From IMG/VR virus record IMGVR_UViG_3300035698_029839, positions 124,001-188,000 of that record: 64,000 bases of DNA; one strand, given 5' to 3'. The notes beneath the pieces were generated by a model. It searched no databases, was not told the origin of the DNA, and saw only the letters and a list, made by a program, of their open reading frames with translations. The translations under genes and the position numbers were made by a program. Numbering within the stretch: position 1 is the stretch's first letter; every line of letters begins with the position of its first letter. This document shows positions 21,236 through 53,679 of this stretch, one piece after another.

Positions 21236-21894
21236 TGTCCAAGAAAATTGATGTACAGAAAAACTCTATTGTAGTTACTAATGTCCAAAATACAAATATA
21301 GTACCTTATCTGTTTAGTTTAGATAGGATAGAAAAAACAAATTGTAATTTGTGCCAATGCAATCATAGAGATTTTGCAGAAGAGATTTATGAGAATCAGA
21401 AAAGAAAAAACTATTCTGAGATTAAAAGAAAATTGAAAGAAGAACATGATTATGATGCAACCGTAGGTGGGATTAAAAATCATATGATATATCATTATCA
21501 GGCAGCTAAAAGAAATGCTTCCTTACAAGAATATGCTGATGATGTTCAAAAATGGGTGAATATGCAAACTAATAAAGTTGCGGCATTAAAAACCAGAATA
21601 GCGGTACTAGAAAGAGAAATGTTTACTATTGCACAAGAAGGCGAAGAGCTTGAAATATCTGAAAGAAGAAAAAATGCGGAAACAGTTAAAAAATTAGCAG
21701 AAACTATTTTAACTTATGAAGATAAATTAGCAGAGTACCAAGAAGAAGTAAAACCTGTTAGTTTGGTTTTTAATCAATTAAAAGTTATTGTTAATGATGA
21801 ATTATCTCATATTGATAATATTAAGACTAAAAAAGTTGTAAGTACTATTCTTAGTAGATTACATCAAAGTGTTGGTAGTATGATAATAGAATAA
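21226..21894 (+). CDS. hypothetical protein (CxxC plus helical/coiled coil)
   Basis: CNLCQC..H, long helical C-terminus. Confidence 0.55.
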   Translation: MDIMSKKIDVQKNSIVVTNVQNTNIVPYLFSLDRIEKTNCNLCQCNHRDFAEEIYENQKRKNYSEIKRKLKEEHDYDATVGGIKNHMIYHYQAAKRNASLQEYADDVQKWVNMQTNKVAALKTRIAVLEREMFTIAQEGEELEISERRKNAETVKKLAETILTYEDKLAEYQEEVKPVSLVFNQLKVIVNDELSHIDNIKTKKVVSTILSRLHQSVGSMIIE

Positions 21895-21919
21895 TAGAAT
21901 AATAGAATAATAGAATAAT
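21885..21919. repeat. octamer tandem repeat (AATAGAAT) x4
   Basis: Direct reading. Confidence 0.8.
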
Positions 21920-29627: not shown

Positions 29628-31076
29628 ATGGCATTTAATAGATATGTAGAGGGGTTTGATCAGTGTGAGCCTCCCGTATGTCCTGAAAACGTTGTTGTAG
29701 AAATTGTAAGCACTATTTGTACAGAAGATAAAGTATTACATGTAGGGTGGAGTGTAGCTGATGCATTTAACAGAAGTTTAAGTTCTAATGTAATTTTATG
29801 GTCTTGTGGCAATCAAGATTTTAATAATACTTCTTATCCTACAAATAATACCGAACCGTATAAAACTTCATTTGATATATCGGGTTGTTCTGGTGTTATT
29901 TATTTAAAAGCAAGGATTAGAATAGGTACAACTTTTGTAGAGGGTGATACGGAGACATTTAACACTGAATTATGCGGTCATGGCGGCGGCCCCGAGGAAA
30001 ATTTGGCAGTTCCAGCTATGCAGTGTGACAATTGTTCCAATGGAATACAACTAGAGGGTCTGTTATATGTCAAATCTTCTACTATTCCTTCTTACCCTGT
30101 TTATTTTAGTTATGTGGGAATATGTTGGTATATAAATAGTAATGATAATGAAATATCTATAGGAGATTTACCAGTTGGTTCTATTTCTATGGACATTACC
30201 ACTACTTACTCTTCTTGTGAAGATTGTTGTTTACAAATAGATTGCCCCAGTCCTTGGGTAGAAACAGAGGATGGTACTGAAATGATAGGAACTTATTATT
30301 TTGAATATCAAACGTATGCTGTTCCTGATCGGATATACGTAGTTAAGAATTTCGTAGAAGGAGAACAGTGTATTCGGGACGAAAAAAATGGGTGGTGGGT
30401 TATTAGCCCTCCCCCCCCTGAAAAAATATTATTTAATACAGGTTGCGTTGCTACTAGTCTTGAAGATTGTCCGTCTTTCTTTGTTGGAACTCCTTCGTGT
30501 ATAGAATGGGAATATCCTACATATGGTTTTTGTTTGACTGTTAGAGAAAGTGATCTACCTATAGGTGTAGTCATTGACTGTGGTTGTGATACTATTTCTC
30601 ATACTTATTGGAGAGTATGTTCTATAACTCCTGATGGAGATACTCTTTCATGGGAAGGTGGGGACGAATGCTTATGTGTATCTGATGATATTTCAAGCTC
30701 AAGCAGCTCAAGCTCAAGTAGTTCAAGTAGTTCAAGTAGTTCAAGTAGTTCAAGTAGTTCAAGTAGTTCAAGTAGTTCAAGTAGTTCAAGTAGTTCAAGT
30801 AGTTCAAGTAGCTCAAGTAGTTCAAGTAGTTCAAGTAGTTCAAGTAGTTCAAGCTCAAGTAATGATTGCGATTGTACCCAGCCAGGATTATGTGAATCTG
30901 TGCCTAAACTATGGCTTGGTGGTAATTGTGATGGGGTTGGTGCTGGTGATTGTCCTCCAGGCATAGATGATTACTGTTTATCTCATCCAACATTTACGGA
31001 GCTTTGCTCATATAGAGATCCAACTTGTATTAGTCATGAGTGCTGGTATGCTACTGTTTGTCATTGTGATTGTTAA
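29628..31076 (+). CDS. Cys-rich protein with 56-residue poly-Ser linker and Cys-rich tail
   Basis: Paralog of 26776; Ser run then CDC..C..C domain. Confidence 0.8.
   Translation: MAFNRYVEGFDQCEPPVCPENVVVEIVSTICTEDKVLHVGWSVADAFNRSLSSNVILWSCGNQDFNNTSYPTNNTEPYKTSFDISGCSGVIYLKARIRIGTTFVEGDTETFNTELCGHGGGPEENLAVPAMQCDNCSNGIQLEGLLYVKSSTIPSYPVYFSYVGICWYINSNDNEISIGDLPVGSISMDITTTYSSCEDCCLQIDCPSPWVETEDGTEMIGTYYFEYQTYAVPDRIYVVKNFVEGEQCIRDEKNGWWVISPPPPEKILFNTGCVATSLEDCPSFFVGTPSCIEWEYPTYGFCLTVRESDLPIGVVIDCGCDTISHTYWRVCSITPDGDTLSWEGGDECLCVSDDISSSSSSSSSSSSSSSSSSSSSSSSSSSSSSSSSSSSSSSSSSSSSSSSSSSSSSSSNDCDCTQPGLCESVPKLWLGGNCDGVGAGDCPPGIDDYCLSHPTFTELCSYRDPTCISHECWYATVCHCDC
30693..30860 (+). repeat. (TCAAGTAGT)n repeat encoding poly-serine
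   Basis: 168 nt, 9-nt period, 56 Ser codons. Confidence 0.95.
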
Positions 31077-31554: not shown

Positions 31555-32688
31555 ATGAAGAGAAATAATAAAGAACAAAAAGAAATACTAGAACAAAAAG
31601 AGTTTTTAAGACAAGTTATAGATGCATCTCCTAGTTTAGTTTTTGTTAAGGATATTAATGGAAAATATATTTTAGCAAATAAAGCAATGGCTAAATTATA
31701 TGGAACAACTATTACTGAAATGGAGGGAAAAACTGATCATGATTTCGCTAAAAAAAATATAATTAATGTCAAAGAAGCAGATAAATATGTTGATGCAGAT
31801 AGAGAAGTAATAGAAAATAGAAAAGAAAAATATATTAGTGAAGAAACTGTTACCAGTTTTGATGAAAAAATTACTTATTTTCAAACTAATAAAATTCCTA
31901 TTATTTTAAATGATGGTTCTGTATGTTGTCTTGGAGTTTCTTCTGATATTACAGCAAGAAAGAAATCAGAAGAAGAATTGTTAAAAGTCAATGCAGAATT
32001 AGAACAGTTTGCTTATGTGGCTTCTCATGACCTTCAAGAACCATTAAGAGCAGTTTATTCTTATTGCCAATTATTAAAAGAAAAAGAATATGATAATGTT
32101 AATGATGAGGGGAAGAAGTATTTTAACTATATAATAGATTCTAGTCTAAGAATGAGAAATCTTATTAAAGAACTTCTCGATTATTCGAGAGTTGGGAGAA
32201 AAGATAAACCATTTGAAAAAATTAATTTAGGAGAAGTATTAGAGGAAGTATTGAATGATTTTGAAGTTCTGATAAAAGAGACAGAAGCTAATATAATTAT
32301 TGATCGCGATATACCACATATTTTTGGTATACGTTTTAGAATTAAACAATTGTTACATAATATAATTAGTAATTCATTAAAATTCAAAAGTGAGGAAAAA
32401 CCTGTTATAAGAATAATTTGTTGCAATTATAAAAAAAATTCTCATTATTGGCTTTTTTATATTAAAGATAATGGACTAGGAATAGAGCCAAAATATTATG
32501 ATCGTATTTTTGGGATTTTTAAAAGATTGTATTCAAGAGAAGAATATCCTGGTACAGGAATAGGATTAGCATTATGCAAAAGGATTGTAGAGGCCCATGG
32601 TGGTAAAATATGGGTAAAATCTCAAAAAGATAAAGGAACTTGTATCTATTTTACGATTGCTAAATCATGGGGTATTTTTGATAATTAA
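31555..32688 (+). CDS. cytoplasmic PAS-domain histidine kinase
   Basis: PAS (FVKDING.Y..AN), ASHDLQEPLR, N-box, DNGLGI, GTGIGLA; no TM segment. Confidence 0.93.
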   Translation: MKRNNKEQKEILEQKEFLRQVIDASPSLVFVKDINGKYILANKAMAKLYGTTITEMEGKTDHDFAKKNIINVKEADKYVDADREVIENRKEKYISEETVTSFDEKITYFQTNKIPIILNDGSVCCLGVSSDITARKKSEEELLKVNAELEQFAYVASHDLQEPLRAVYSYCQLLKEKEYDNVNDEGKKYFNYIIDSSLRMRNLIKELLDYSRVGRKDKPFEKINLGEVLEEVLNDFEVLIKETEANIIIDRDIPHIFGIRFRIKQLLHNIISNSLKFKSEEKPVIRIICCNYKKNSHYWLFYIKDNGLGIEPKYYDRIFGIFKRLYSREEYPGTGIGLALCKRIVEAHGGKIWVKSQKDKGTCIYFTIAKSWGIFDN

Positions 32689-32706: not shown

Positions 32707-32734
32707 TTGAAAAGTGAAAGTGATATGGTATAAT
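32707..32734 (+). promoter_or_regulatory. sigma70-type promoter with AGTGAAA box
   Basis: TTGAAA-16nt-TATAAT with TG extension. Confidence 0.75.
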
Positions 32735-32770
32735 AATTCCATTAAAGTATTTTATTATTTTTATCGATAA

Positions 32771-32822
32771 TAGAATAGTTAGTTTAGTTTAGTTTAGTTT
32801 AGTTTAGTTTAGTTTAGTTTAG
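32771..32822 (+). repeat. 11 x TAG array (mostly TAG-NN) in 5' leader
   Basis: TAG at 32771, 76, 80, 85, 90, 95, 32800, 05, 10, 15, 20; SD follows. Confidence 0.9.
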
Positions 32823-32838
32823 AGAAAAGGAGTACAAA

Positions 32839-33456
32839 ATGAAAAAGGGTAAAGCGGAATTAGTGTTTATTGTTGATCGCTCAGGTTCAATGAGCGATAT
32901 TGCCTCAGATATGCAAGGGGCAATCAAGTCAGTTCTATCAGATCAAAAGAAAAAATATAAAGGTGATATCGATGTAACCTTTGTGCGTTTTGATTCTGAA
33001 TACGAAGAAGTATTTAGTGGTCGATCTATTAAAGAAGTTTCTGAAAAAGATTTAGAGATTGATCCAAGAGGAGCTACGGCTCTATTGGACGCAATGGGAA
33101 AAACTATCAATAATTTTGAAAGAAAATTCTCTGAAAAAGAAGAGAAGGACAGACCTGAAAAAGTTTTGTTTCTTATCATCACTGATGGAGGAGAAAATGC
33201 TAGTGATGAATTTTCAAAAGATAAAGTTTTTGGTATGATTAAGACTGTTGAGAGAGATCACAAATGGGGATTTACGTTTATTGGGGCCAATCAAGATGCT
33301 ATTTCTGAAGGTAGCAATATTGGAGTAGCAAGAGGTAAATCTCTTAATTATGCAGCAAGTAGTGCTGGAGTTAGATGTATGTCTCAAGAAGTTAGTAATT
33401 TTACAACAAGTTACCTTAGTAAAGGTGATGCAAGTTACTCTTCCGATGATGAGTAA
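32839..33456 (+). CDS. von Willebrand factor A domain protein
   Basis: DRSGSM MIDAS, T.LLDA, ITDGGENAS, FIGANQDA. Confidence 0.92.
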   Translation: MKKGKAELVFIVDRSGSMSDIASDMQGAIKSVLSDQKKKYKGDIDVTFVRFDSEYEEVFSGRSIKEVSEKDLEIDPRGATALLDAMGKTINNFERKFSEKEEKDRPEKVLFLIITDGGENASDEFSKDKVFGMIKTVERDHKWGFTFIGANQDAISEGSNIGVARGKSLNYAASSAGVRCMSQEVSNFTTSYLSKGDASYSSDDE

Positions 33457-33460
33457 TTTT

Positions 33461-33509
33461 TAGTTTAGTTTTAGTTTAGAATAGAATAGAATAGAATAGT
33501 TTAGTTTAG
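33461..33509 (+). repeat. 10 x TAG array in intergenic leader
   Basis: TT- and AA-spaced TAG units, followed by the same AGAAAAGGAGTACAAAATGA as the first leader. Confidence 0.9.
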
Positions 33510-33525
33510 AGAAAAGGAGTACAAA

Positions 33526-34395
33526 ATGAGTTACGATCAAAAGATCCAGTCTGCTCGCAAAGTCATTGACGAGCACAACAACAATGCCGACAAGAAAATT
33601 AATTTTGAGGATTTCATCAAAAAATTGATAGACTTGGGAGGTTCTTCGGAAGACGCATTGAAAGCCGCAAGTTGGGACGACCTCGAAAAATGTGGAATCC
33701 CTACAATTATGGCAAGAAGATTAACATTTCTTTTTAGACAAGATTCTGATAATGGAGGTGGCAAATCTACCTACATTTCAGAAAAGAAGGTTGCAGGACT
33801 TTCTTATAAGGAATTAATTGAACGTTACAATCCAAAAGATGTTAAAAATCCTGTAGGTAAAAGATTAAAAGATCTTTCAGATGGCAAAAAGTTTATTGTA
33901 TTTAATGATAATAGTAAAGTTAATGTCGAAGAAACAGTCAAACTTTTAGAAGATCTTTTAAATGGTCTGGAAGAAGTAAAAACAGCTTTTGTATGTAATA
34001 GGCCATTTCCAACATTTTGTATTGGAGAACGTCCAGACTTCTACGTTGAAGAAAATCCTATTTATCCTGGAAGAGCATTACGTTCTAATGAAACATGTGA
34101 TCAAACAGGACGTTCATGGCAAGGAGTTTCATTAGAAATTCGTCAGTTGTTATATATGGCAGTTGCCACGTATGAGCTTGAAATATCATCTGTATCGAAT
34201 GCTCATGATATACTTGATAAAGTTTTGTCAAAGGATTGTTCTTTAGATAGTATTAGAGCGAGGTACCCAGAAGCATCCAAGCAGTTTGATGGAGATTCTA
34301 AAATAGGACAACTCCCTCTTCTTAAGATCAGAGTAGGAGAACAGGGGAATAAAGGAAAAAGTAACGTTCCTTTTGGTGAAAACACCACTTATTAA
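33526..34395 (+). CDS. hypothetical protein (possible SAM-like helical N-terminus)
   Basis: L...SWDDLEKCGIP...AR pattern. Confidence 0.6.
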   Translation: MSYDQKIQSARKVIDEHNNNADKKINFEDFIKKLIDLGGSSEDALKAASWDDLEKCGIPTIMARRLTFLFRQDSDNGGGKSTYISEKKVAGLSYKELIERYNPKDVKNPVGKRLKDLSDGKKFIVFNDNSKVNVEETVKLLEDLLNGLEEVKTAFVCNRPFPTFCIGERPDFYVEENPIYPGRALRSNETCDQTGRSWQGVSLEIRQLLYMAVATYELEISSVSNAHDILDKVLSKDCSLDSIRARYPEASKQFDGDSKIGQLPLLKIRVGEQGNKGKSNVPFGENTTY

Positions 34396-34401
34396 TATTA
34401 A

Positions 34402-34440
34402 TGATAAGGGGGCAACTTCGGTTGCCCCTTTGTCTTATCA
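34402..34440 (+). terminator. UUCG hairpin, terminator or processing stem
   Basis: GGGGCAAC-TTCG-GTTGCCCC, extendable by TGATAAG/CTTATCA. Confidence 0.75.
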
Positions 34441-34452
34441 AGGAGACAAATA

Positions 34453-35619
34453 ATGTCACAAGAAATGTCAGTAAAACAAGATTTAAAATGCGTTTTTAAT
34501 ATGCCTGAAAAAATAAGTAGTCAATTTGATGGAGATCAAGAAGCATATCATGGGCTTCCACCGTATGCTCCGATAGATGCTTGTCCTGTAGATGAGTACG
34601 AGGCTTGTCCCACTAGTTGGATACATGGCTCAGATATGGTAAGTAGTTATTTCGTAGGAGTAAAAGAAGGTCATGGTATGTGGATAGATCTTAATGAATG
34701 CTTCTATCATACTCATGATGTTGCTATTGTTATTTCTATTCAGGGTATCAATCCTATTACAGGTCAAAAAATGGTAGCTGAGAAAGCTTTAAAGCTAGAG
34801 CAGTATCATAAGAAATGTCCTATTCATAAAGTGAATTTTAAACAAGATAGATATTGTGAAAAATGTGGTTTTAAATGGCCTGGACAAAATTATCTAGCAA
34901 CAACTGGAACTCCCGAAATGAGGTTATGGTTGGATGGTTTTAGAACTCCAGAGGGAACAGTAAGGCAGTATATTTTTACAGAAGATGAAATGAGAGGAGT
35001 AGCTTCTCAGCTAATAGGAAAGGAAAGAGTTTTTGCTATAGGTATTGCTTATTATCTTAGTAAGAATAAGAAACCTTATACTTTGAAACGTCCTGAAAAA
35101 AGAGAATTGTCTGTTGATCATACAGGAGATTCTTTTACCCCACCTATATTTTTTAGCCCCTGGCATACTTCTCAGAGTTTGAATAAAAAAAGCAACGCGG
35201 GTTCTCCACCATCTTATATGGGGCTAGGACATGACTCAAATACTAACATTGATTCTTTAGAATCTATGAATATAAGTTCTTCTGGTGGTTCAGCAGGTGA
35301 TGCTCCCATTGGTAGTAATATGACTAATAGCAGTAAAAAATCTTCTATGAGAGGAGTAATTACTCCTGATAGTGCTCCAGTAGAAGCGCAAGCAGTTCAA
35401 CCAATTACTCCTGTTAAACAATTAGAGATAGGAGCAGGAGCATTAATACAACAACAAGTTTATGATGATCCTAAAATATTAAATTATTGGGAAGAAAAAC
35501 CCGCTGGTATGATTTACATTAATTATTGTGATGAAGGAACAAAGAAGAAAATTTTAGATGCTGGTAGAAGAGCAGATAAAAAAGATGGTTTTATGAAAGA
35601 TCTTAAAGTAGGTGGATGA
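34453..35619 (+). CDS. uncharacterised conserved-domain protein (WLDG..G.VRQ family)
   Basis: LPP..PVDEY, MWI, INPITG, NY, WLDGF....VRQ, GAGALIQQ..Y.D. Confidence 0.6.
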   Translation: MSQEMSVKQDLKCVFNMPEKISSQFDGDQEAYHGLPPYAPIDACPVDEYEACPTSWIHGSDMVSSYFVGVKEGHGMWIDLNECFYHTHDVAIVISIQGINPITGQKMVAEKALKLEQYHKKCPIHKVNFKQDRYCEKCGFKWPGQNYLATTGTPEMRLWLDGFRTPEGTVRQYIFTEDEMRGVASQLIGKERVFAIGIAYYLSKNKKPYTLKRPEKRELSVDHTGDSFTPPIFFSPWHTSQSLNKKSNAGSPPSYMGLGHDSNTNIDSLESMNISSSGGSAGDAPIGSNMTNSSKKSSMRGVITPDSAPVEAQAVQPITPVKQLEIGAGALIQQQVYDDPKILNYWEEKPAGMIYINYCDEGTKKKILDAGRRADKKDGFMKDLKVGG

Positions 35620-35667: not shown

Positions 35668-36111
35668 TTACATTGCAGCAGATTTTTTAGATGAATGCGT
35701 TGAATTTAAAGTAGCAAAAGTCAAAGCTCTGGAAAGATCTTTTGGTTGTATTTCGTCTTTAATTAAATAATCTTTAATTCCTAATAACCATGCTTTTCGT
35801 CCGATAGAATAATCTTCTAATCCTGTTAGAACGATAACTGGTATATTTTTGTTGTGTTTTCCGAGATGGTTTAATGTCGTTTCTACTGTTTCTATTCCAT
35901 CTGATTCTGGTAGCGCTAAATCAAGGATGATAGCGTCATAATTCTGTGAGGATAATTTTGTTAGTCCATGTTTTAGACAATTGCATTCGTCAATTATGAT
36001 GTTATTTTTTTCAAATTGGTTAATATAGTTAATTATTAAGTCCCTGTCTTCTTTACTATCTTCTATTAGTAGTACTTTCATTTTTTTTTTGTCCTTTCTA
36101 TTTATAAACAA
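35668..36111 (-). CDS. single-domain response regulator
   Basis: LLIED, ILDLALPESDG, VLTG, DYLIK. Confidence 0.92.
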   Translation of the reverse strand: MFINRKDKKKMKVLLIEDSKEDRDLIINYINQFEKNNIIIDECNCLKHGLTKLSSQNYDAIILDLALPESDGIETVETTLNHLGKHNKNIPVIVLTGLEDYSIGRKAWLLGIKDYLIKDEIQPKDLSRALTFATLNSTHSSKKSAAM

Positions 36112-36551
36112 GAATTCTTATTATCTGGTAGTTTGTTAGATTTTAACCAGTATTCTCCTATCATATTTACTTTTTCATATAATTCATTAATGTCAAAAGT
36201 TTTAGTGACGTATGAATTAGCATGTAATTTATATGTTTCTTCTATATCAGAATAATCTTCAGAAGTGCTAAATATAATGACAGGTATCGCTTTGTAGTTT
36301 TCGTCATTTTTTATTGCTTTAAGTATTTCTTTTCCACTAAGTCCTGGCAAATTTATATCTAAAAGAATAATATTAGGAGTTGGTGCGGATTCAAATTTGT
36401 CTTTTTTATAGAGGAAATTTAAAGCGTCGCCGCCATTAGTTAGATTGAGGATATTTAATGAAAGATTAGGAATCTTGTTTAAAGCTTGTTTTATAAGCTC
36501 AAAATCAGCTTCATTGTCTTCTATAGATAGCACAGTGAATCTTTTACACAT
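36102..36551 (-). CDS. single-domain response regulator (Rcp1/CheY-like)
   Basis: IEDN.AD, LLDINLP, FSTS, ANSYVTK. Confidence 0.92.
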   Translation of the reverse strand: MCKRFTVLSIEDNEADFELIKQALNKIPNLSLNILNLTNGGDALNFLYKKDKFESAPTPNIILLDINLPGLSGKEILKAIKNDENYKAIPVIIFSTSEDYSDIEETYKLHANSYVTKTFDINELYEKVNMIGEYWLKSNKLPDNKNSCL

Positions 36552-44670: not shown

Positions 44671-45123
44671 ATGTCAGATTTTAATAGGGTTTTTTTGATC
44701 GGGAATTTCGCACAAGATCCAGAGCTAAAAGATATTGGTAGCAGCAATAAGGTAGCTAATTTTGTTATTGCTAGTAATAGAAATTGGACTGGGCCTGAAG
44801 GCGAGAAGGCAGAAGAAGTTTCATTTATTGATTGTGTCTCTTACGGAAAACGAGCCGAAACAATTGCTCAGTATTTTTCAAAAGGAAGAAAAATATTTAT
44901 TGAAGGCCGTTTGAAACAAGAGAAATGGATTGATAAGGAAACTAAAAAGTCACAAAGTAGGATCAGGGTCATTGTTGAAAGTTTTAATTTTATGGATAGC
45001 AAAAAAGAAAATGGTACTTGTAGTAGTACTTGTCCAGCAACAGGAGCTATTCCTGTGGTAGCAGGTAATGATATACCTATTGTTGATGCACCTGCTAAAG
45101 ACGGTGATTTCGAGATTATTTAG
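44671..45123 (+). CDS. ssb: single-stranded DNA-binding protein
   Basis: NRVFLIGN..DPE, KG..IFIEGRL, acidic tail DGDFEII. Confidence 0.93.
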   Translation: MSDFNRVFLIGNFAQDPELKDIGSSNKVANFVIASNRNWTGPEGEKAEEVSFIDCVSYGKRAETIAQYFSKGRKIFIEGRLKQEKWIDKETKKSQSRIRVIVESFNFMDSKKENGTCSSTCPATGAIPVVAGNDIPIVDAPAKDGDFEII

Positions 45124-53329: not shown

Positions 53330-53679
53330 GGGGATAAACTGGTTATCGATTCTTACGGTAGAGAGTTGAATGGCGTGTACGAGATGGTAGTCGGCTCGTT
53401 TAAAAATCTACTAACAATTTATAACTGACACTAGTTATGCAAAAGCTGCTTAAGCTAAATTAAGCTGTTTGTTCCAGATTCCTGTTATGGAAACAAGCAC
53501 GAAAACAGGATGGTTGATTATCTTTTTTCTCAAGAGGATATGATGCGAGATTAATTTGAGATAGAAATGAAGAACCTTGTTAATTAGGGTCGGATTTTTG
53601 AATTTTAAATAATTAACTACGCACGTAGAAGTTTAATTTAAAAGTAAAGAAGACGCGAGTTCGAATCTCGCTATCTCCA
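53330..53679 (+). ncRNA. ssrA: tmRNA, tag (A)DTSYAKAA
   Basis: GGGGATA/TATCTCC-A acceptor with G3-U; T-arm GCGAG-TTCGAAT-CTCGC; ATAACT then tag ORF 53427-53453 ending Ala-Ala-stop. Confidence 0.93.

What the first reader, a model, noticed from the sequence alone, without database searches (positions are those of the whole stretch)
32771..33529. Two TRAP-like (UAG-NN)10-11 RNA operators in front of consecutive genes
Seen: the leader of the vWA gene has 11 TAG triplets and the leader of the next gene has 10. Nearly all are at 5-nt period, and both arrays run into an identical AGAAAAGGAGTACAAAATGA ribosome-binding site. Spacers switch between TT and AA while TAG and phase are kept, which simple slippage explains poorly. 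Established: Bacillus TRAP is an 11-mer ring binding up to 11 (G/U)AG triplets with 2-nt spacers and represses translation near SD sites. Inference: this operon is translationally controlled by a TRAP-like ring protein, or sponges one, possibly coupling it to amino-acid status.
Basis: partly seen in the sequence, partly recalled or inferred. Interest (0 to 1): 0.75.

Follow-up and report, generated by a model that had tools for sequence, protein, structure and literature searches.

The report
Conserved UAG-repeat leaders in huge phages
Two neighbouring genes of a huge salt-lake phage are each preceded by a run of 10-11 UAG triplets ending at the ribosome-binding site; dozens of related phages keep such runs, which points to a protein-binding switch on translation whose binding protein is unknown.

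Summary
Array 1 (32771-32822) has 11 TAG and array 2 (33461-33509) has 10. All steps are 5 nt except one of 4 and one of 6. Both arrays run into the same 20-nt RBS block.

The window is part of a 298-kb phage contig (31% GC, standard code) that has no other such non-coding array. The arrays are not a private microsatellite. Across 66 non-identical leaders of the two genes (a vWA protein and a 289-aa protein, here 'p289'), nearly all carry 4-13 TAGs next to the SD. TAG is 5.1x enriched there, while TAA is depleted. Spacers drift (31% are not TT), but only about 3% of in-phase units lose TAG.

That fits a UAG-specific, multi-site RNA operator that occludes the SD, with TRAP/HutP-like geometry. 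The TRAP reading itself is not supported:
- No TRAP, HutP, Hfq, RegA, RRM or S1 homologue was found in this phage or its relatives, two of which are complete.
- Copy number varies freely, and the period shifts to 6-7 or 3 nt in relatives.
- Triplets are UAG only.
- The genes are unrelated to tryptophan.
- Similar arrays occur in unrelated phages, including 61%-GC ones.

The binder is unidentified. A protein-free leader function remains a serious rival.

The parts
32707..32734 (+). Sigma-70-type promoter: TTGAAA, 16-nt spacer, TG-extended TATAAT. The predicted transcript start is near 32741.
   Evidence: 11 of 12 consensus matches plus TG. A similar promoter sits in the homologous position in relatives L005 and L061.
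32745..32780 (+). 5' leader hairpin. It includes the palindrome TTATCGATAA (32761-32770) and the first AATAG units.
   Evidence: It is the only stem kept in the centroid fold of leader 1. Relatives have a TTGTCGAAT/TTATCGATAA box and often the palindrome GTAGTTGGCCAACTAC in the same place.
32771..32822 (+). UAG array 1: 11 TAG triplets, mostly TTTAG units, in the leader of the vWA gene.
   Evidence: Homologous vWA leaders in 18 genomes carry 4-11 TAGs.
32823..32842 (+). Shared RBS block 1: SD AAGGAG at 32827-32832, ATG at 32839.
   Evidence: Identical to the block at 33510-33529; there are only two copies in the contig.
32839..33456 (+). vWA-domain protein, 205 aa, with a DxSGS MIDAS-type motif.
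   Evidence: Pfam VWA E=4.6e-07; phrog_7371 E=2e-54.
33461..33509 (+). UAG array 2: 10 TAG triplets with TT, TTT and AA spacers. It fills the vWA-p289 intergenic space.
   Evidence: Homologous p289 leaders carry 4-13 TAGs.
33510..33529 (+). Shared RBS block 2: SD AAGGAG at 33514-33519, ATG at 33526.
33526..34395 (+). p289: a conserved 289-aa protein of huge phages, function unknown. The N-terminal 78 residues form a helical domain similar to HhH or SAM domains.
   Evidence: 96 homologues, all unnamed. No Pfam, PHROG, NCBIfam or PADLOC match. AF2 pLDDT is 84. The only fold matches are weak (Z about 7) and fall in the HhH regions of DNA glycosylases and in SAM domains.
34409..34435 (+). Terminator-like GC hairpin with a short U tract, after p289.
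   Evidence: Read. The stem was detected, where it is listed on the minus strand; it is a palindromic stem.
34453..35619 (+). p388: the conserved downstream partner gene, function unknown.
   Evidence: A gene of about 280-430 aa follows p289 in all the relatives examined. The Atlas gives only unnamed viral clusters.

Best explanation
The two arrays are RNA operators in the 5' leaders of the vWA and p289 cistrons. Each is a row of UAG triplets, usually separated by two arbitrary nucleotides, that runs up to (and in relatives into) the Shine-Dalgarno sequence. An oligomeric or cooperatively binding protein that reads UAG would coat this unstructured tract and block 30S binding. That would repress both cistrons together, as TRAP does at trpG/trpP and as T4 gp32 does on its own leader.

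The number of triplets changes quickly by replication slippage, which would tune the strength of repression.

Shown: the anatomy, its conservation, and the selection on UAG. Inferred: that a protein binds, and that the effect is repression. The binder is unknown. It is not a recognisable TRAP, HutP, Hfq, RegA, RRM or S1 protein of the phage.
For: 1. The arrays are far beyond chance and unique in the contig.
2. Orthologous leaders found through protein homology alone carry TAG clusters next to the SD. This holds in nearly all relatives at 45-79% protein identity, and in another form (TAGTAG, TAGAAGAAG) at 35-40%.
3. In 25 non-identical leaders TAG is 5.1x over the locus background, TAA 0.36x and TGA 0.64x. 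The signal is therefore not AT-richness or stop codons in general.
4. Of 269 five-nt steps, 31% have a spacer other than TT (AA, AG, AT, TC, TA). Only 9 in-phase units lack TAG.
5. Wherever vWA precedes p289 (18 genomes), both leaders carry an array.
6. The last TAG often fuses with the SD as TAGGAG, or a TAG lies between the SD and ATG.
7. The array region has no significant structure (z about 0) and is preceded by a hairpin. This is the layout of the T4 gene 32 operator: a structured nucleation site followed by an unstructured run of UUAAA repeats that holds the RBS (PMC535899).
8. TRAP binds 9-11 NAG repeats and blocks the RBS (PMC4347634). HutP reads UAG with sequence-independent spacers (PMC2425495). 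RB69 RegA selects UAA triplets (PMC3014915).
9. The longest array among 66 leaders has 13 triplets, whereas generic TAGNN microsatellites in phages reach 15-31.
Against: - No binding protein was identified. TRAP, HutP, Hfq, RegA, RRM and S1 are absent from this contig and from related genomes.
- Count and period are not fixed (4-13 triplets; steps of 5, 7, 6, 4 and 3 nt). That is awkward for a rigid ring.
- The homogeneous TTTAG runs look like plain slippage products.
- Array-plus-SD combinations with TGA in place of TAG also exist in phages, though they are fewer and shorter.
- There is no expression or binding data. Assembled contigs of public runs break at both arrays.
Confidence: 0.45

Rival explanations
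1. Protein-free cis element. The array is an unstructured, C-poor landing or standby tract (a translation enhancer or spacer) that cannot pair with the SD and closes all three reading frames. Its repetitive form is the product of slippage.
For: The array is unstructured. Steps of 5 and 7 nt, which rotate TAG through all frames, make up about 86% of steps, against about 8% for 3 and 6 nt. Unit indels separate near-identical genomes, as in L056 and L058. The element recurs in unrelated phages with no shared candidate protein.
Against: Three stops would be enough, yet 8-13 are kept. TAA and TGA are depleted rather than used interchangeably. G at triplet position 3 is almost never lost, although the spacers drift. 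In 61%-GC phages an AT-rich run that keeps strict TAG is costly to maintain without a sequence-specific reader.
Confidence: 0.25
2. Host TRAP (MtrB) itself binds the arrays, coupling the operon to host tryptophan.
For: (UAG-NN)n with 2-nt spacers is the published TRAP ligand type (reference titles). The window's counts of 10-11 fit an 11-mer. Promoter and SD signals resemble those of Bacillota.
Against: - There is no TRAP in the phage genomes.
- Relatives have 4-13 triplets, and 6-7-nt or 3-nt steps.
- Triplets are UAG only, whereas natural TRAP sites mix GAG and UAG.
- The genes are unrelated to Trp.
- The element is found across phages of 28-48% GC from many habitats, and analogous arrays occur in 54-61%-GC phages.
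- The host is unknown; the only relative in the phage record collection is uncultured.
Confidence: 0.08
3. Autogenous control. p289 itself binds the UAG tract of its own leader and of the vWA leader, like T4 gp32.
For: The arrays are tied to p289 in every relative and to nothing else in two genomes scanned whole. The leader layout matches the gene 32 operator. The N-terminal HhH/SAM-like domain of p289 hints at nucleic-acid binding.
Against: The fold evidence is weak (Z about 7, within the noise stated). The phage has a separate canonical SSB. Unrelated phages use the same kind of array before unrelated genes. High-GC p289 homologues have no array.
Confidence: 0.1
4. RNase target or mRNA processing/instability element, for example cleavage after G in an AU-rich context that separates or destabilises the cistrons.
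For: There is one G per unit in an A/U background, and array 2 lies exactly between the two cistrons. That RNase Y and RNase E prefer such sites is from my own knowledge and was not checked here.
Against: The strict conservation of U and A before the G is unexplained. The common spacers AA, AG, TC and TA do not fit the RNase E rule. There is no transcript data.
Confidence: 0.05
5. DNA-level element: overlapping TAnnnT -10-like hexamers causing sigma-dependent pausing, an AT-rich unwinding element, or a recombination site that lets the vWA cassette be gained or lost.
For: Every 5-nt unit, and the common TAGAGT(T) units, form TAnnnT. In other phages the arrays follow iteron-like direct repeats. 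The vWA gene is flanked by two direct arrays and is absent in some lineages.
Against: G at hexamer position 3 is not what sigma-70 prefers, yet it is invariant. The arrays sit consistently against the SD. Array 2 has no promoter upstream.
Confidence: 0.07

Closest known systems
TRAP (MtrB) binding sites of Bacillus (trp leader, trpG, trpP/yhaG, ycbK)
   Same: Rows of NAG triplets with short, non-conserved spacers (mostly 2 nt). They lie on the mRNA next to or over the SD, and the window has about 10-11 triplets.
   Different: No TRAP gene in the phage or its relatives. Triplets are UAG only. Copy number is 4-13 and evolves by slippage. Relatives have steps of 6-7 or 3 nt. The regulated genes are a vWA protein and an unknown protein, not Trp genes.
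HutP antitermination site of the Bacillus hut operon
   Same: UAG is the recognised triplet, and the spacers are sequence-independent and U-rich. Relatives with TAGAGTT units have the 7-nt period of HutP sites.
   Different: HutP needs two sets of three UAGs about 20 nt apart, and it acts on a terminator. Here there is a continuous run, no leader terminator and no HutP homologue.
T4 gene 32 autogenous translational operator
   Same: A 5' structured element, followed by an unstructured tract of more than 40 nt made of repeated pentamers (UUAAA there, UAGNN here) that contains the RBS. It is a phage system.
   Different: The repeat sequence differs. p289 is not shown to bind nucleic acids. The phage has a separate OB-fold SSB.
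RegA translational repressor sites (T4/RB69)
   Same: A phage repressor that binds unstructured, triplet-repeat RNA (UAA triplets by SELEX) at the RBS.
   Different: No RegA homologue here. The triplets are UAG at 5-nt spacing, not contiguous UAA.

Membership tests
TRAP (MtrB) regulon site | 9-11 (G/U)AG triplets | tested here: inconclusive
   The window has 11 and 10, but homologous leaders have 4-13. All triplets are UAG, none GAG.
TRAP (MtrB) regulon site | 2-3-nt spacers between triplets | tested here: met
   In the window, 17 of 19 steps are 5 nt. Across the family there are 234-269 steps of 5 nt, against about 50 of 7 nt and about 16 of 6 nt.
TRAP (MtrB) regulon site | A TRAP protein (PF02081) is available in the phage or host | tested here: not met
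   No match in the phage contig or in five related phage genomes, two of them 100% complete; the B. subtilis control was positive. The host genome is unknown, so the host part is not testable.
TRAP (MtrB) regulon site | Regulated genes belong to tryptophan metabolism or transport | tested here: not met
   The downstream genes are a vWA protein and two proteins with no family match.
HutP site | Two sets of three UAGs with 4-nt spacers about 20 nt apart, upstream of a terminator, plus a HutP protein | tested here: not met
   The run is continuous at 5-nt period. There is no terminator between array and start codon. No PF09021 match.
gp32-type autogenous operator | A structured 5' site, then unstructured pentamer repeats that include the RBS | tested here: met
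   A hairpin at 32745-32780 is followed by an array with z about 0. The T4 layout is described in PMC535899.
gp32-type autogenous operator | The regulated gene encodes the single-strand nucleic-acid binder | tested here: inconclusive
   p289 shows only a weak HhH/SAM-like N-domain. A canonical SSB is encoded elsewhere, at window 44680-44994.
Hfq distal-face (ARN)n site | Contiguous A-R-N triplets and an Hfq protein | tested here: not met
   The window's period is 5, not 3. Only distant relatives have TAGTAG or AAGAAG runs. No phage Hfq.
Neutral microsatellite | Homogeneous units, not conserved at orthologous sites in diverged genomes | tested here: not met
   Arrays sit at the orthologous position across 40-79% protein identity. 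Spacers are mixed and TAG is kept.

The most novel reading that the evidence does not exclude
UAG-pentamer arrays fused to the SD are a recurrent, undescribed class of phage translational operator, read by a not-yet-recognised family of UAG-specific oligomeric RNA-binding proteins (phage-encoded, or a broadly conserved host factor). Slippage-driven copy number would act as an evolvable rheostat. The same design appears in huge phages, in small low-GC phages and in 61%-GC siphophages.
Probability: 0.3. Interest if true: 0.8.

Novelty: new variant of a known kind. Interest (0 to 1): 0.62.

Why it matters
Translational operators made of NAG repeats are known only from two Bacillus proteins, TRAP and HutP, each with a handful of targets.

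Here the same RNA design is conserved at one operon across a large clade of uncultured huge phages, with clear selection on the triplet. It reappears before unrelated genes in unrelated phages, and none of the searched phage genomes has a recognisable TRAP or HutP.

If a protein reads these arrays, it is a new RNA-binding regulator with a simple, programmable recognition code. The arrays give an easy bait for finding it. If no protein reads them, the arrays show that a specific triplet repeat has a direct effect on initiation, and that effect is not yet understood.

Tried and rejected
- **Alternative genetic code:** rejected. ORFs are intact under table 11, and none of the 33 tRNAs is a suppressor.
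- **Rfam:** no family matches the leaders.
- **Read-level copy-number variation:** public runs (salt-lake metagenomes) are held only as assembled contigs, which end at both arrays. This gives no information.
- **Function of p289:** Pfam, PHROGs, NCBIfam, PADLOC, a PDB profile search, Foldseek against PDB and BFVD, and a VIA wide search gave only a weak HhH/SAM-like N-terminal match.
- **p388:** only unnamed viral clusters.
- **Host identification:**
  - The only hit in a species-representative genome is a 546-kb contig binned as Bacteriovoracaceae, probably itself a phage.
  - The only hit among deposited phage records is an uncultured 595-kb phage.
- **Shared candidate binder among array-bearing phages:** blastp of the fetched parts found only thioredoxin-like and SSB proteins in common.
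- **Phage CsrA:** present in this contig and in G005 but absent from complete G002, which has an array.
- **Antisense partner:** there are no CTA arrays on the same strand anywhere in the contig.
- **Complex prediction:** not run. A protein-RNA job gets no verdict, and I do not claim a specific binder.

Full report
**What is there**

The window is bases 124001-188000 of a 297,710-bp IMG/VR virus record. The record is 31% GC, CheckV puts it at 62% complete, and it comes from salt-lake metagenomes. It carries 33 tRNAs, none of them a suppressor, plus a tmRNA, and its ORFs are intact under table 11.

The operon starts at a strong sigma-70-type promoter, TTGAAA-16-TGgTATAAT at 32707-32734. This lies just after a PAS histidine-kinase gene (31555-32688). 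The order downstream is:
- a leader of about 97 nt containing array 1;
- the vWA gene (32839-33456);
- a 69-nt intergenic space filled by array 2;
- p289 (33526-34395);
- a terminator-like hairpin (34409-34435);
- p388 (34453-35619);
- two REC-only response-regulator genes on the other strand.

Array 1 has 11 TAG (steps 5,4,5x8) and array 2 has 10 (steps 5,6,5x7). Both are followed by the same 20-nt block, and the identity extends to 33 nt. Four TAGs at 5-nt period occur 11 times in the window against 0.02 expected. Nothing comparable exists in non-coding DNA elsewhere in the 298-kb contig.

**It is a conserved element, not a private microsatellite**

I looked for relatives through the p289 protein only, so the arrays played no part in finding them. 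The searches gave 96 homologous proteins, 33 viral loci and 80 metagenome loci.

- At 45-79% identity, nearly every leader has a TAG cluster next to the SD, with 4-13 triplets. Most are at 5-nt period with spacers TT, AA, TC, AT, TA or AG. Others use 6-7-nt units such as TAGAGT and TAGAGTT.
- At 35-40% identity the motif changes form, to TAGTAG(tcg) or TAGAAGAAG. Homologues from 61-69%-GC phages have none.
- In all 18 genomes where a vWA gene precedes p289, both leaders have arrays.
- In the closest large relative (G001, 351 kb) the only non-coding arrays of 8 or more TAGs are again these two leaders.

**Selection is on the triplet**

Over 25 non-identical leaders, TAG is 5.1-fold above the locus background. 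TAA is at 0.36x and TGA at 0.64x.

Over 66 non-identical leaders, 31% of the 2-nt spacers differ from TT, but only 9 in-phase units have lost TAG.

Copy number is labile. L056 and L058 are near-identical and differ by one TAGAGTT unit. The two arrays of one genome have unrelated counts. The longest array has 13 triplets, whereas generic TAGNN microsatellites in phages reach 15-31.

**Position and structure**

- The arrays always lie on the sense strand and end 0-10 nt before the SD.
- In many relatives the last TAG is fused to the SD as TAGGAG, or a TAG lies between the SD and ATG.
- The array region has no significant structure (z about 0) and is preceded by a hairpin.
- Relatives share a TTGTCGAAT/TTATCGATAA box. 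Many have the palindrome GTAGTTGGCCAACTAC before the array, and some have a second hairpin between the array and the SD.
- No Rfam family matches.

**Mechanism**

The most economical reading is a multi-site RNA operator. A protein that recognises UAG, as an oligomer or by cooperative binding, would cover the unstructured tract and exclude the 30S subunit from both cistrons.

Known systems supply the logic:
- TRAP binds 9-11 NAG repeats and blocks the RBS (PMC4347634).
- HutP reads UAG with sequence-independent spacers (PMC2425495).
- T4 gp32 uses a structured site followed by UUAAA repeats that hold the RBS (PMC535899).
- RB69 RegA selects UAA triplets (PMC3014915).

Binding and repression are inferences. 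Nothing here measures either.

**Why it is not filed under TRAP**

- PF02081 is absent from this contig and from five related genomes, two of them complete, while the control rings in B. subtilis.
- HutP, Hfq, RegA, RRM and S1 are also absent.
- The count of 10-11 is one value in a 4-13 range.
- The triplets are UAG only.
- The genes have nothing to do with tryptophan.
- The 'identical RBS' is found only in this lineage and in G001. Most genomes have two different RBS blocks.

**Autoregulation by p289 is possible but weakly supported**

The only fold hint for p289 is a helical N-terminal domain of HhH/SAM type at Z about 7. The phage also has a normal SSB.

**The same design occurs elsewhere**

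Pattern scans of IMG/VR found TAG-pentamer arrays with mixed spacers running into an SD in unrelated phages:
- A family of small low-GC phages, before a 61-74-aa first gene of an operon and after TGTCACATGTGACA-type repeats (L147, L158, L167, L268).
- A 61%-GC siphophage family, with 9-13 units before a Minor_capsid_2 gene and after TGCAAACTGC repeats (L224, L258, L259).
- Several single cases (L145, L149, L254/L255, L260 with 17 units, L267, L269).

A control scan with TGA in place of TAG found two families, both with the minimum five units. Most TAGNN microsatellites in phages are homogeneous and not next to an SD. The general case is therefore suggestive, not proven.

No protein is shared among the fetched parts of these phages apart from thioredoxin-like and SSB proteins.

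This recurrence, especially in high-GC phages, argues against host TRAP and against a purely p289-specific loop. It leaves two live options: an unrecognised family of binders, or a direct cis effect of the repeat.

**Limits**

- The host is unknown.
- There is no transcript or binding data.
- Public runs are held as contigs that break at the arrays.
- The AFDB and Atlas fold libraries were unavailable.

Noticed in passing
window 30714-30853 (inside ORF 29628-31076): A perfect 9-nt coding repeat (TCAAGTAGT x15.6) encodes a poly-Ser tract. It carries 15 out-of-frame TAGs 2 kb upstream of the arrays. In G001, a comparable TAG-rich repeat that looks like a poly-Ser coding tract (AGT/TCT/TCA codons) lies about 8 kb upstream of that genome's arrays; it is longer and irregular, with 37 TAGs.
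   Followed up: partly
G000:C1:257495-257659 (L266), outside the window; also G005:C1:13473-13628 (L265): The phage encodes a CsrA homologue (E=1e-23) inside its tRNA cluster, and so does a complete relative. It is absent from G001, G002 and G004.
   Followed up: partly
window 31555-32688 (+), 35668-36111 (-), 36102-36551 (-): Phage-borne two-component parts flank the operon: a PAS-HisKA-HATPase kinase and two REC-only response regulators. The two REC-only-sized minus-strand ORFs keep their position next to p289-p388 in L003, L004 and L005.
   Followed up: partly
L147, L158, L167, L268; L224, L258, L259; L260; L254/L255; L145; L149; L267; L269: Unrelated phages (34-61% GC) have TAG-pentamer arrays with mixed spacers fused to an SD. 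The arrays often lie directly after 3-4 iteron-like direct repeats.
   Followed up: partly
window 32761-32770 and homologous leaders (e.g. L069, L087): A conserved TTGTCGAAT/TTATCGATAA box and, in many relatives, the perfect palindrome GTAGTTGGCCAACTAC lie between the promoter and the array. This could be a DNA operator or an RNA nucleation hairpin.
   Followed up: no
window 53330-53679 (G000:177330-177679) and G000:246009-257786: A phage-encoded tmRNA (tag DTSYAKAA) and a cluster of 33 tRNAs.
   Followed up: no
window 21883-21919: A perfect 8-nt repeat (ATAATAGA x4.6) places four TAGs at 8-nt period in another intergenic leader.
   Followed up: no
L135 (CALFYV010000090.1, 546 kb): The only p289 homologue in the species-representative genomes lies on a 546-kb contig binned as a Bacteriovoracaceae MAG. 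It is probably a huge-phage contig placed in a bacterial bin.
   Followed up: no
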